In this document: in pieces, positions 46,001 through 49,000 of the stretch
Numbering within the stretch: position 1 is the stretch's first letter
Layout of the letters: every line of letters starts with the position of its first letter
The notes under the pieces: generated by a model
What the model saw: the letters and a program-made list of their open reading frames with translations, nothing else
Databases searched by the model: none
Told to the model about the DNA's origin: nothing
DNA from: Saccostrea cucullata
Taxonomy: Eukaryota
Assembly: GCF_032062105.1 (NCBI RefSeq)
Contig: NW_026930660.1
Location: 186,001 to 250,000 of the forward strand
DNA: 64,000 bases
Reading direction: 5' to 3'
Position numbers and translations under genes: made by a program

Positions 46001-49000
46001 GACACGCATGATATTCACACGTGTGAAAACATAGGTATAACATACGTGGTACTTTTTTCATGGAAAACGTACGTGAAGTCACGTACGTGTCACATACATT
46101 TAACATACGTGAAACGTACGTGGCACAATTAGCTGTGTATACAGTAATAGCCTTTATCAATGATCTTTATAAAAACTGTGGATGAGGAGTATCTAAAACT
46201 AGCCAGAAAACATTTTTGATTTAATTGGCAAAGCACTTGTTCTATTGATAGGAAGGCACATTTATATATCTACACTGGACATGCACTGATATCTAAAGCA
46301 TAAAGTGTTATATCAGGTGCAGAACATGAAATAATTCTAGAAAAGTTTTCACAAGTGAACTTATCAAACAAGGTTTTGAACAAAAGAAAATACATGTATG
46401 TGTTCATCTTATATATTCCTAAAATAAAATTTTTTACCACAACACATGCACTCAAGCAAATAGAACTAATTTGAGAAACTGCAATGGATGGAATTATCAG
46501 TAAAAATCCAAAATCGCACCATGACCTCAATTAGAAAGAGTATTGACCTAGCGGCTGAGTTGAGTTTTAAGTAGCATTTAATCAAGAAAGAAAGGAAACT
46601 ACACTATGAACACAAATCCTTCTCTAGTGCATATGAAAACAATACAAAATCCAAACAAAAATTTATACATTATTCCAAAACTGCCAAAAAATACTCTTCT
46701 ACATTCAATTTGCATGTTCATGTGAACACTTCACAAAAATTATGTTTACACACACAGATTAAAAATTGAGGTATGTGAAATTTACATCCTTGAATAACTG
46801 GACACATATGACAGGGTCTATAGATGTATTGTACAGATGAGTCTTGCTTACAATCAGTTTGTATGTGAAAGACTTTTTGATAATGAAGATGGTATTGTAC
46901 TTATATCCCTATAGGCTATATAGCAAAAATTCTCTTACTATCATATTCTGACTCTGACATGATTCAAACAACACAACATCTTTTCTTGGTATATCACTAA
47001 AACTTGTTCAATTTATGCATTTACAATCGATATTACTGTATACTGGGAAATTTTCGCCCCCTTTTTGTTTTTGCTTTCTCCACTGGACGAATTTAAAACA
47101 AGGCGAATTTGAAGAACACAGCATAATTTCATAAACAGAACTATGACTGGACCAATCTAAAATGGGGCAAAATTGTTCACAAGTGCAGAAGGGCGAAAAT
47201 AACACGAAGCGAAAATAACGCTGTATACAGTATTCAGATGTTGTAAGAATTAAGCTCTGTATAGTCGGACATTTCTAGTGCTGTGAGTAAACCTCTGTCC
47301 CACTTTCTGTGATAAGCAGCGAGACTCCTGACAGCTCTGTGTGATGTGCAGTAAAGTGAAAACAACTTACTGCAGCAATGGAGGGATTACTGGCGTCAGT
47401 ATAAAGTGAAATGAACTTACTGCAGCGATGGAGGGATTACTGGCATCAGTAAAGTGATGGAGGGTTTAATGGCGTCAGTGTAAAGTGAAATGAACTTACT
47501 GCAGCGATGGAGGGTTTACTGGGGTCAGTAAAAAGTGAAATGAACTTACTGCGGCGATGGAGGGTTTACTGGGGTCAGTATAAAGTGAAATGAACTTACT
47601 GCAGTGATGGAGGGTTTACTGGGGTCAGTATAAAGTGAAATGAACTTACTGCAGCGATGGAGGGTTTACTGGGGTCAGTATAAAGTGAAATGAACTTACT
47701 GCGGCGATGGAGGGTTTACTGGCGTCTCCGGCTGGAGGATGGGTCACGTCGGCGCCGAGGAAAATAACAGGTTCTCTAAATATGGCAGGACTGTAAAGAA
47801 CAAGGGAGTGAGATAGAACGTGCAGACTACACGGCGGCGACAGTAGGCATGCCTAAAGCCCAGAAGTCAGCAGCATGCAACAATATAATCAGAACCAGAC
47901 ACAGATTACTAAACCATTCAATATGCTCAGTTTTATTCTTCTCTTGATAGTAGAAGGGATTTCTTTTAAATTTTTTTTAAATTTTCTTCCTAAAATCCAA
48001 CCATCTCATTTTAGAATATTCTGCATTGTAATTCTTTTTTTCCAATGAATAGAAAAAAACTAAGAGATGGTAATAACGGGCAATTTTTGTCTGGTTTCCA
48101 TGATGATGTCACATGCTGATCATGCTAAATATAGCTAGAGCCCCTCTCTCAAAACCCCTCTGTATGAATAATCCTATTCAAAGAATGAGTAAACCAAATA
48201 CATTTAGTTCCCCTGAGGCTATTACAATATTCTGATAATTTCTGTACACTTTTTAGAATTCATAATACAATGATCTTTCTGTGATTTTTTCCCCAGGTTT
48301 TGAGTGAGAGTGGTCAGAATTTGTAGAGGGCTGTTACCATGACTATAGGGTGACTCTGACTTACTGCTGCTATGGAGGGCTTAGTTTTATCCCCAGCTGG
48401 TGGGTGGGTCACGTTAGCACCCAGAAAAATTACAGGTTCTCGAAAAACCTTGGGACTAGAAAATTAACTTATCTATGGAATTCACTATCACAATGGCAAT
48501 TCAACAATAATACATGTATAATAAATTATAGTTACTAGACCAGTTGAATACATTTTCTGTTATTATTAGTACAATTTTTCCAAGATACCTTTGTAATATA
48601 TCAACTGAAGCTTCATTGAAATATTACATATAGATTTTTTGTAACTTGACAGATTTTTACAAACTTAAGTTAAATCTGCAATTTCAGATAAAATCATTTG
48701 CTTAGAATAATTGAGTTTCCTTCTGGTCTACTTATGATAAATCAGTTACAACTTACCGTATACTAGGCAGCAGGATGTTGTTGATCCCTCCCAGTTTGAC
48801 GTTGATTTTTAGGCAGAGGTTGGAGAGCGTCTGTGGAGTAGTTTTGTTCACATTTTTGGCCTGAACACATTGTGTGGCTAATCCAAATAATATATCCCCT
48901 ACACGCTTCACCTCAGCTGAAACGCATTAGGATCAGATATTAAGGAGGCTGGGGGTCAACATATAAACCATCAGATATTAAGGAGGCTGGGGGTCAACAT

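What the first reader, a model, noticed from the sequence alone, without database searches (positions are those of the whole stretch)
47700..48455. Splice-switchable slicer: duplicated Argonaute PIWI exon encodes either the catalytic Asp (GADVTH) or Asn (GANVTH)
Seen: two 91-nt homologous exons (48365-48455 and 47700-47790) with the same phase and intact AG/GTAAGT sites. 25 of 30 codons give the same amino acid, and 15 of those 25 differ synonymously, which points to an old duplication under purifying selection rather than a decayed copy. 91 is not a multiple of 3, so including both or neither shifts the frame. Established: this Asp is the first residue of the DEDH slicer tetrad (human AGO2 D597), and replacing it abolishes slicing. 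The other three residues (HRQEII, YRDGV, YAHLV) are intact in constitutive exons. Inference: exon choice toggles one gene between an endonuclease and a non-slicing, repress-only Argonaute, a split that vertebrates achieve with paralogues AGO1-4. I do not recall this being described, but I could not search.
Basis: partly seen in the sequence, partly recalled or inferred. Interest (0 to 1): 0.96.

Follow-up and report, generated by a model that had tools for sequence, protein, structure and literature searches.

The report
Splice switch disarms oyster Argonaute nuclease
One oyster gene for the microRNA effector Argonaute carries two interchangeable copies of the exon holding its first catalytic residue, one intact and one with a change known to abolish RNA cutting, and distant clams and snails have a disarmed copy at the same place, so splicing probably decides whether the enzyme can cut RNA.

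Summary
Observation confirmed and extended. The window holds a miRNA-class Argonaute gene whose exons match Saccostrea cucullata RefSeq isoforms exactly. Two 91-nt homologous exons encode Asp or Asn at the human AGO2 D597 position; including both or neither gives a premature stop. The Asn exon is not an error or private allele: annotated isoforms of six oyster species in four genera carry it. Against C. virginica it shows 15 synonymous and 2 nonsynonymous differences, with Asn kept as AAC versus AAT. Dreissena, Mya and three caenogastropods have an alternative exon with Ser at this position; Mercenaria's keeps Asp; Mytilus lacks it. Human AGO2 D597N is published as non-cleaving. Four GCATG (Rbfox-type) motifs between the exons keep their positions in two oysters, suggesting tissue-specific switching (inference). 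Limits: three public RNA runs of a close relative (contigs only) show only the Asp exon, so the Asn form is minor or tissue-restricted, and slicing by the oyster Asp form is untested. The gene has two more exon pairs (N and L2 domains), which this scan noted earlier in the same window. No paper describing the switch was found.

The parts
48365..48455 (-). Alternative (5') PIWI exon, Asn at the AGO2 D597 position (codon 48415-48413); short pyrimidine tract at its acceptor
   Evidence: identical peptide in S. cucullata RefSeq isoforms X2, X5, X6
47700..47790 (-). Main (3') PIWI exon, catalytic Asp (codon 47750-47748); long pyrimidine tract; the form seen in RNA
   Evidence: (junction 48757>47790 at contig depth 1161 in run X2, and onward join to the 38762 exon)
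48108..48142 (-). Conserved 35-nt intronic block (91% identical in C. virginica) with two GCATG motifs (48125-48121, 48116-48112); candidate Rbfox-type enhancer downstream of the Asn exon
47848..47878 (-). Two further GCATG motifs (47878-47874, 47852-47848) just upstream of the Asp exon acceptor, at similar positions in C. virginica; candidate silencer of the Asp exon
48338..48345 (-). 8-nt motif TAGTCATG shortly after the Asn-exon donor, also present after the alternative-exon donor in C. virginica and Dreissena
48757..48916 (-). Constitutive exon upstream of the pair (MID to PIWI)
38568..38762 (-). Constitutive exon downstream of the pair, with tetrad Glu (38693-38691) and second Asp (38597-38595)
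37481..37680 (-). Constitutive exon with tetrad His (37533-37531)
62051..62232 (-). N-domain alternative exon a (182 nt; aligns to human AGO2 about 113-172)
   Evidence: used in M. gigas/M. angulata isoforms
61529..61710 (-). N-domain alternative exon b (182 nt)
51427..51549 (-). L2 alternative exon a (123 nt; Asp and Tyr at human S387 and Y393 positions); minor form in RNA
   Evidence: (depth 18.8 versus 251 in run X1)
50911..51033 (-). L2 alternative exon b (123 nt; Asn and Phe at those positions); major form in RNA
37051..63516 (-). miRNA-class Argonaute coding region within the window: 19 exon positions, three of them duplicated (22 exons); the first coding part was not mapped

Best explanation
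The oyster miRNA-class Argonaute gene uses a tandemly duplicated, mutually exclusive exon pair that encodes the first PIWI strand and following loop, including the first metal-binding Asp of the DEDH tetrad. Default splicing skips the 5' Asn exon (weak acceptor) and uses the 3' Asp exon, giving a tetrad-intact protein (shown at RNA level in a relative). In some cells a splicing regulator, most likely an Rbfox-type protein binding the conserved GCAUG motifs that lie downstream of the Asn exon and upstream of the Asp exon, switches to the Asn exon (inferred). Transcripts with both or neither exon carry a premature stop and are expected to go to nonsense-mediated decay (frame shown, decay inferred). 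The Asn product is a full-length Argonaute that should still load miRNAs and recruit GW182/TNRC6 but cannot cleave targets (inferred from human D597N and the otherwise intact protein). Selection keeps a functional but catalytically dead isoform, and the catalytic Asp in the 5' copy was replaced by different residues in different mollusc lineages (Asn in oysters; Ser in Dreissena/Mya and in caenogastropods).
For: Anatomy and frame. Asn exon in annotated isoforms of six oyster species and in C. virginica genomic DNA in the same order with intact splice sites. pS 0.62 and pN 0.03 for the Asn exon versus pS 0.63 and pN 0.015 for the Asp exon and pN 0.007-0.022 for other exons; Asn kept across a synonymous codon change. 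Dreissena genome has the Ser exon 5' of the Asp exon. Ser-exon isoforms in Mya, Pomacea and Littorina, including RefSeq-independent GenBank models for Littorina and Dreissena, and both exons in one Batillaria model. All these isoforms keep the other three tetrad residues and the C-terminus. The best PDB match of the Asn exon is a human AGO2 chain (5T7B) with Asn at this position, and D597N gave no cleavage (PMC6048500). Four GCATG in the 574-nt intervening intron against 0.41 expected, and four at matching positions in C. virginica, none in the flanking introns. Rbfox activates from downstream and represses from upstream (PMC11874969). The only AGO-clade paralogue found in this genome has single exons and an intact tetrad, so a non-slicer is not supplied by a paralogue.
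Against: No coverage of the Asn exon in three RNA runs of a relative at 85% likeness, while the Asp exon had contig depths of 29-1161 and some intronic contigs at depth 3-15 were kept. All five Logan full-length mRNA contigs examined from M. gigas and C. virginica use the Asp exon. Support for expression is therefore annotation-based; I could not see the RefSeq evidence. Mytilus has no second copy, and no alternative appears in Pecten, Mizuhopecten, Patella, Gigantopelta or pulmonate isoform sets, so it is dispensable in some lineages; Mercenaria's alternative exon keeps Asp. Slicing by the Asp form is untested. The GCATG enrichment was found post hoc and is not seen in Dreissena (1 motif).
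Confidence: 0.72

Rival explanations
1. The exon pair is a real, selected splice switch, but its point is not slicing. The Asp isoform may already be a poor slicer, like human AGO3, and the alternative exon is kept for the other residues it changes (the loop after the catalytic strand has Lys/Arg instead of Ala/Ser in every alternative copy). Loss of the Asp would then be relaxed constraint, tolerated repeatedly.
For: Mercenaria's alternative exon keeps Asp but shares the loop Lys, as do similar exons in Mactra and Potamilus. A DEDH tetrad does not guarantee efficient slicing (PMC5714244).
Against: Asn is fixed across all six oysters including a synonymous codon change, and Ser is fixed across Dreissena/Mya and across three caenogastropods, which looks like selection on the substituted residue rather than drift. 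The Asp is invariant in the main exon of all molluscs examined and in 141 of 145 motif hits among distant homologues.
Confidence: 0.15
2. The Asn isoform is a loading-impaired or competing (dominant-negative) Argonaute: without slicing it cannot clear passenger strands of perfectly paired duplexes, or it holds fully paired targets without cutting, so it dampens siRNA-type silencing rather than acting as an ordinary repress-only RISC.
For: Follows from established Argonaute biochemistry (own knowledge). Molluscs appear to lack a dedicated siRNA Argonaute (PMC12479628), so the same protein would handle both guide types.
Against: No direct data. Non-slicing human AGO1 and AGO4 are functional repressors. 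This reading differs from the best explanation only in downstream effect.
Confidence: 0.08
3. The Asn exon is a conserved but essentially unspliced relic, and the RefSeq isoforms are annotation artefacts propagated by cross-species protein alignment.
For: Zero coverage in three RNA runs; no Logan-sourced protein with the Asn exon among the clusters read; absent in Mytilus.
Against: Synonymous sites have diverged as much as in constitutive exons while amino acids and both splice sites are kept, and the surrounding intron is otherwise unalignable; this pattern requires translation. Contigs cannot show absence, and a 91-nt alternative path is short enough to be removed by SPAdes-style graph simplification (Logan methods; the length threshold is from my own knowledge).
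Confidence: 0.05

Closest known systems
Human AGO1-4 (slicer AGO2 versus non-slicing AGO1/AGO4 and conditional AGO3)
   Same: Same protein clade and fold (about 1510 bits to AGO2); a slicing/non-slicing split among near-identical miRNA Argonautes.
   Different: Split is between paralogous genes, and uses the last tetrad residue (AGO1 DEDR) or N-terminal motifs (AGO3) (PMC9262622, PMC5714244). Here it is within one gene, by exon choice, at the first Asp.
Engineered human AGO2 D597N (PMC6048500; PDB 5T7B chain carries Asn at this position)
   Same: The same substitution at the same position; reported as non-cleaving.
   Different: Laboratory mutant; the oyster form is natural, conserved and spliced in as an alternative.
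Shrimp Ago1A/B/C splice isoforms (PMC3510085) and C. elegans CSR-1a/b (PMC8421154)
   Same: Argonaute isoforms from one gene with different roles or expression.
   Different: They differ by a 27-aa PIWI insertion or an N-terminal extension; no homologous exon swap and no catalytic-residue change is described in the passages read.
Tandem-duplicated mutually exclusive exons (e.g. Dscam, C. elegans unc-32 exons 7a/7b in PMC3585155; survey in 10.1101/292813)
   Same: Homologous same-length exons with variable residues near functional sites; Rbfox-family regulation is known for such pairs.
   Different: The survey reports variable residues near functional sites and mentions disturbed catalytic sites in general; it does not mention Argonaute (0 occurrences).

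Membership tests
miRNA-class (AGO clade) Argonaute | N-L1-PAZ-L2-MID-PIWI architecture, closer to AGO than to PIWI proteins | tested here: met
   Exons hit ArgoN, ArgoL2 and Piwi; the matching RefSeq isoform scores 1510 bits to AGO2 versus at most 168 to PIWI chains
Slicer-competent Argonaute (Asp isoform) | Intact DEDH tetrad | tested here: met
Slicer-competent Argonaute (Asp isoform) | Guide-directed target cleavage | not testable with these tools
   Needs a biochemical assay; a tetrad alone is not sufficient (PMC5714244)
Slicer-competent Argonaute (Asn isoform) | Intact DEDH tetrad | tested here: not met
   First Asp replaced by Asn; D597N is non-cleaving in human AGO2
Mutually exclusive duplicated exons | Adjacent homologous exons of equal length and phase with canonical splice sites | tested here: met
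Mutually exclusive duplicated exons | Never both or neither in productive mRNA | tested here: met
   Both or neither gives a premature stop; every oyster isoform read has exactly one copy; no both-included joint in RNA contigs
Mutually exclusive duplicated exons | Each exon is spliced in by junction reads | tested here: inconclusive
   Asp exon yes; Asn exon not seen in three contig-level runs of a relative and present only as annotated isoforms
Mutually exclusive duplicated exons | Both copies under purifying selection | tested here: met
   pN/pS about 0.05 (Asn exon) and 0.02 (Asp exon), uncorrected, against C. virginica
Rbfox-regulated exon pair | Conserved (U)GCAUG motifs downstream of the activated exon and upstream of the repressed exon | tested here: met
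   4 motifs at matching positions in two oysters; post hoc, and not enriched in Dreissena
Rbfox-regulated exon pair | Rbfox binding and splicing change on knockdown | not testable with these tools
   Needs CLIP, minigene or knockdown
Dscam-type docking/selector RNA pairing | Conserved complementary intronic elements with compensatory changes | tested here: inconclusive
   Duplexes form in each species but not in a conserved register, and no shuffled control was run

The most novel reading that the evidence does not exclude
A mollusc ancestor duplicated the catalytic exon of its miRNA Argonaute, and at least three lineages (oysters, myid clams and zebra mussels, caenogastropods) independently disarmed the 5' copy, creating a cell-type-regulated (Rbfox, likely neuronal or muscle) switch between slicing and non-slicing RISC from one gene. 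Two more exon pairs sit over regions that tune slicing versus repression in human AGO2 (the N-domain region implicated in AGO2/AGO3 differences, and the Ser387 site), giving up to eight Argonautes per gene.
Probability: 0.4. Interest if true: 0.92.

Novelty: new variant of a known kind. Interest (0 to 1): 0.82.

Why it matters
Why animal miRNA Argonautes keep or lose slicing is an open question, usually studied across paralogues that differ at many sites. Here evolution made a near-isogenic pair inside one gene (5 of about 940 residues differ) and apparently did so more than once with different substitutions, which argues that a non-slicing Argonaute is itself selected. The tissue and stage where the dead isoform is switched on points directly to where slicing is harmful or unnecessary, and this can be read from existing RNA-seq. 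It also bears on RNAi efficiency and antiviral silencing in farmed oysters and other molluscs, which seem to lack a dedicated siRNA Argonaute (PMC12479628). The isoforms sit in RefSeq under generic names, and at least one survey collapsed isoforms to the longest (PMC11114477), so the switch is easy to miss.

Tried and rejected
Assembly error or private allele: rejected, since Asn occurs in six oyster species. Decayed pseudo-exon: rejected by pN/pS. Direct RNA proof: the single read-laying run found no Asn-exon coverage; a contig break at the Asp exon start in run X3 looked like an alternative-exon branch but is better explained by a SNP bubble near 48783. A search for short Logan/ENA fragments carrying the Asn exon found no oyster hit. 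Genomic loci for M. gigas, O. edulis, Littorina and Pomacea could not be fetched. A 30-column tree of the exon peptides cannot decide single versus multiple duplications (2 changes; 45% of bootstrap trees give 1). A conserved docking/selector RNA pairing was not found. Proteins with Thr at this position among distant hits come from short metagenome contigs and show no exon pair in the one locus checked (L010). Ten paper searches found no description of this switch; the library lacks most subscription journals. Joined exons were used only inside one local script to check the reading frame.

Full report
Observation. They are 66/91 identical; 25 of 30 codons give the same amino acid and 15 of these differ synonymously. 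The first encodes GANVTH (AAC, 48415-48413), the second GADVTH (GAC, 47750-47748). The remaining tetrad residues lie in single-copy exons: Glu 38693-38691, Asp 38597-38595, His 37533-37531. A local frame check shows that either exon alone reads through to the true stop, while both or neither stop 711 or 535 nt upstream of the last junction, so they are expected NMD substrates (decay is inference). The exon aligns to human AGO2 584-613, which puts the variable residue at 597.

The gene. I mapped 22 coding exons between 63516 and 37051, all internal ones with AG/GT ends. Three positions are duplicated: an N-domain pair (62232-62051, 61710-61529; 182 nt), an L2 pair (51549-51427, 51033-50911; 123 nt) and the catalytic pair. 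Constitutive exon peptides match all eight Saccostrea cucullata RefSeq isoforms read exactly, so the window is most likely S. cucullata. The genome has one other AGO-clade gene (C23227) with single copies of all three exons and an intact tetrad, in line with two AGO genes reported for C. gigas (PMC4793324). Contig C14398 repeats only the 3' part of the gene from window 47864 onward at 97.6% identity, so it cannot confirm the AAC allele.

Conservation of the dead exon. RefSeq isoforms with Asn at this position exist for S. cucullata (X2, X5, X6), S. echinata (X2, X5, X7), Ostrea edulis (X2, X8, X11), Magallana gigas (X3, X4), M. angulata (X3) and Crassostrea virginica (X2), beside Asp isoforms of the same genes. 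The C. virginica genome has both exons in the same order with the same splice sites. Between S. cucullata and C. virginica the Asn exon has 15 synonymous and 2 nonsynonymous differences (pS 0.62, pN 0.03), similar to the Asp exon (0.63, 0.015) and to other exons (pS 0.46-0.77, pN 0.007-0.022); the Asn codon itself is AAC versus AAT. The introns around are otherwise almost unalignable. This needs translation of the exon and excludes an assembly error, a private allele or a decaying copy.

Beyond oysters. Dreissena polymorpha and Mya arenaria have isoforms with GGSVTH, and the Dreissena genome has that Ser exon 5' of the Asp exon. The caenogastropods Pomacea (X3) and Littorina (eight RefSeq isoforms and a separate GenBank model) have GASITH isoforms, and a Batillaria model runs through both exons, Ser copy first. 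These isoforms keep the other three tetrad residues. Mercenaria X4 uses an alternative exon that keeps Asp, and similar Asp-bearing variants occur in Mactra and Potamilus. Two Mytilus genomes have the N and L2 pairs but only the Asp exon, and no alternative appears in the isoform sets read for scallops, limpets, Gigantopelta, pulmonates or Aplysia (annotation only, not genomes). The same order in three lineages, a shared Lys/Arg after the GD of the loop, and an 8-nt motif after the donor shared by oysters and Dreissena favour one old duplication with separate losses of the Asp, but a 30-column tree cannot prove it. The exon may also duplicate easily: an unidentified metagenome contig has a tandem Asp/Asp pair (L009).

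Effect of Asn. The best PDB match to the oyster Asn exon is a human AGO2 chain, 5T7B, which has Asn at this position, and a D597N AGO2 control produced no cleavage (PMC6048500). Loss of slicing in the oyster Asn isoform is therefore a strong inference. That it still represses rests on the intact remainder of the protein and on the exon keeping the residues equivalent to human F587, P590 and V591, which from my own knowledge line a GW182 tryptophan pocket; this was not tested. Whether the Asp isoform slices well is unknown; human AGO3 has the tetrad and slices only with some guides (PMC5714244).

Expression. Only three RNA runs were offered, all as Logan contigs, from an organism about 94-96% alike in exons. 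They show the junction 48757>47790 (depth 1161 in X2) and the join from the Asp exon to the 38762 exon. The Asn exon had zero coverage in all three, as did its whole surrounding intron, whereas both L2 exons were seen (251 versus 18.8 in X1). All five full-length Logan mRNA contigs examined from M. gigas and C. virginica use the Asp exon. Contigs show presence only, and Logan applies SPAdes-style graph simplification, which by my own knowledge can remove a short low-coverage alternative path of this length but not the 123-nt L2 one; this is a possible, unproven excuse. The fair reading is that the Asp form dominates and the Asn form is minor or restricted to particular cells. Evidence that it is spliced is annotation plus selection, not reads that I saw.

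Likely control. The Asn exon has a short pyrimidine tract and the Asp exon a long one. The 574-nt intron between them has four GCATG motifs (0.41 expected from dinucleotide shuffles; none of 1000 shuffles reached four), two inside a 35-nt block 91% identical in C. virginica and two just upstream of the Asp acceptor. C. virginica has four at matching positions (p 0.02), and the flanking introns have none. Rbfox proteins bind GCAUG, activate exons from downstream and repress them from upstream (PMC11874969), so one factor would turn the Asn exon on and the Asp exon off. This was noticed post hoc, is not enriched in Dreissena, and is inference; a neuronal or muscle setting is my expectation from Rbfox biology. 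No conserved docking/selector pairing was found.

The other two pairs. The N-domain pair covers human AGO2 about 113-172, which from my own knowledge includes the motif II region that governs slicing differences between AGO2 and AGO3 (role described in PMC5714244). The L2 pair covers Ser387, whose phosphorylation shifts AGO2 from cleavage to repression (PMC9262622); the two oyster copies have Asp or Asn there, and the same Asp/Asn contrast recurs in mussels, scallops, several gastropods and Aplysia. These are suggestive coincidences, untested.

Comparison and novelty. Mutually exclusive exons near functional sites are a known class (10.1101/292813), Argonaute splice isoforms are known in shrimp and C. 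elegans (PMC3510085, PMC8421154), and the slicer/non-slicer split is known between paralogues. Ten full-text searches and reading of the main mollusc RNAi surveys found no mention of an exon swap at an Argonaute catalytic residue; one survey kept only the longest isoform. The library misses most subscription journals. I rate it a new variant of a known kind: real, conserved, apparently undescribed and directly testable.

Procedure notes. 

Noticed in passing
window 47350-47720 (- strand): A 50-bp tandem repeat copies the last 23 nt of the Asp exon plus its GTAAGT donor six more times downstream; every decoy donor would add a stop or shift the frame. Copy number differs on contig C14398, and the repeat also appears in RNA-run contigs of the relative.
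   Followed up: partly
G000:C14398:35657-47000: 97.6% copy of window 47864 down to 36406, starting 74 nt upstream of the Asp exon with unrelated sequence before it; no upstream exon or Asn exon in the 20 kb fetched before it. Haplotig with a large insertion, misjoin or partial duplicate.
   Followed up: partly
G000:C23227:202500-226810 (+): Second AGO-clade gene with single copies of all three exon positions and an intact DEDH tetrad.
   Followed up: yes
L015:36661-37576 and L016:38412-38856 (Mytilus): In both Mytilus genomes the 3' end of the exon upstream of the catalytic exon is tandemly repeated into the intron (about ten 76-bp copies in L015), resembling the exon-end repeat in the oyster.
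   Followed up: no
L015 (Mytilus), 70 nt upstream of the single Asp exon: A TGCATG motif persists upstream of the Asp exon although the alternative exon is absent; possible remnant of the switch.
   Followed up: no
L009:240-468: Unidentified metagenome contig with a very tight tandem duplication of the same exon (47-nt spacer), both copies keeping Asp.
   Followed up: partly
proteins P0002, P0004, P0077, P0084: Argonaute fragments from metagenomes with Thr at the catalytic Asp position; source organisms not identified.
   Followed up: partly
window 11784-14899 (+): Patched/sterol-sensing-domain gene (Pfam PF02460 hit).
   Followed up: partly
window 3268-6382 (-), 17196-18570 (+), 20008-21297 (-), 23936-25586 (+): By translation only, unverified: an ankyrin-repeat gene, a B-box/TRIM-like fragment, broken integrase-like retroelement pieces, and a Harbinger-type transposase.
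   Followed up: no
window 54820-56244: Satellite-like intronic repeat also present on contigs C14398 and C23227.
   Followed up: no
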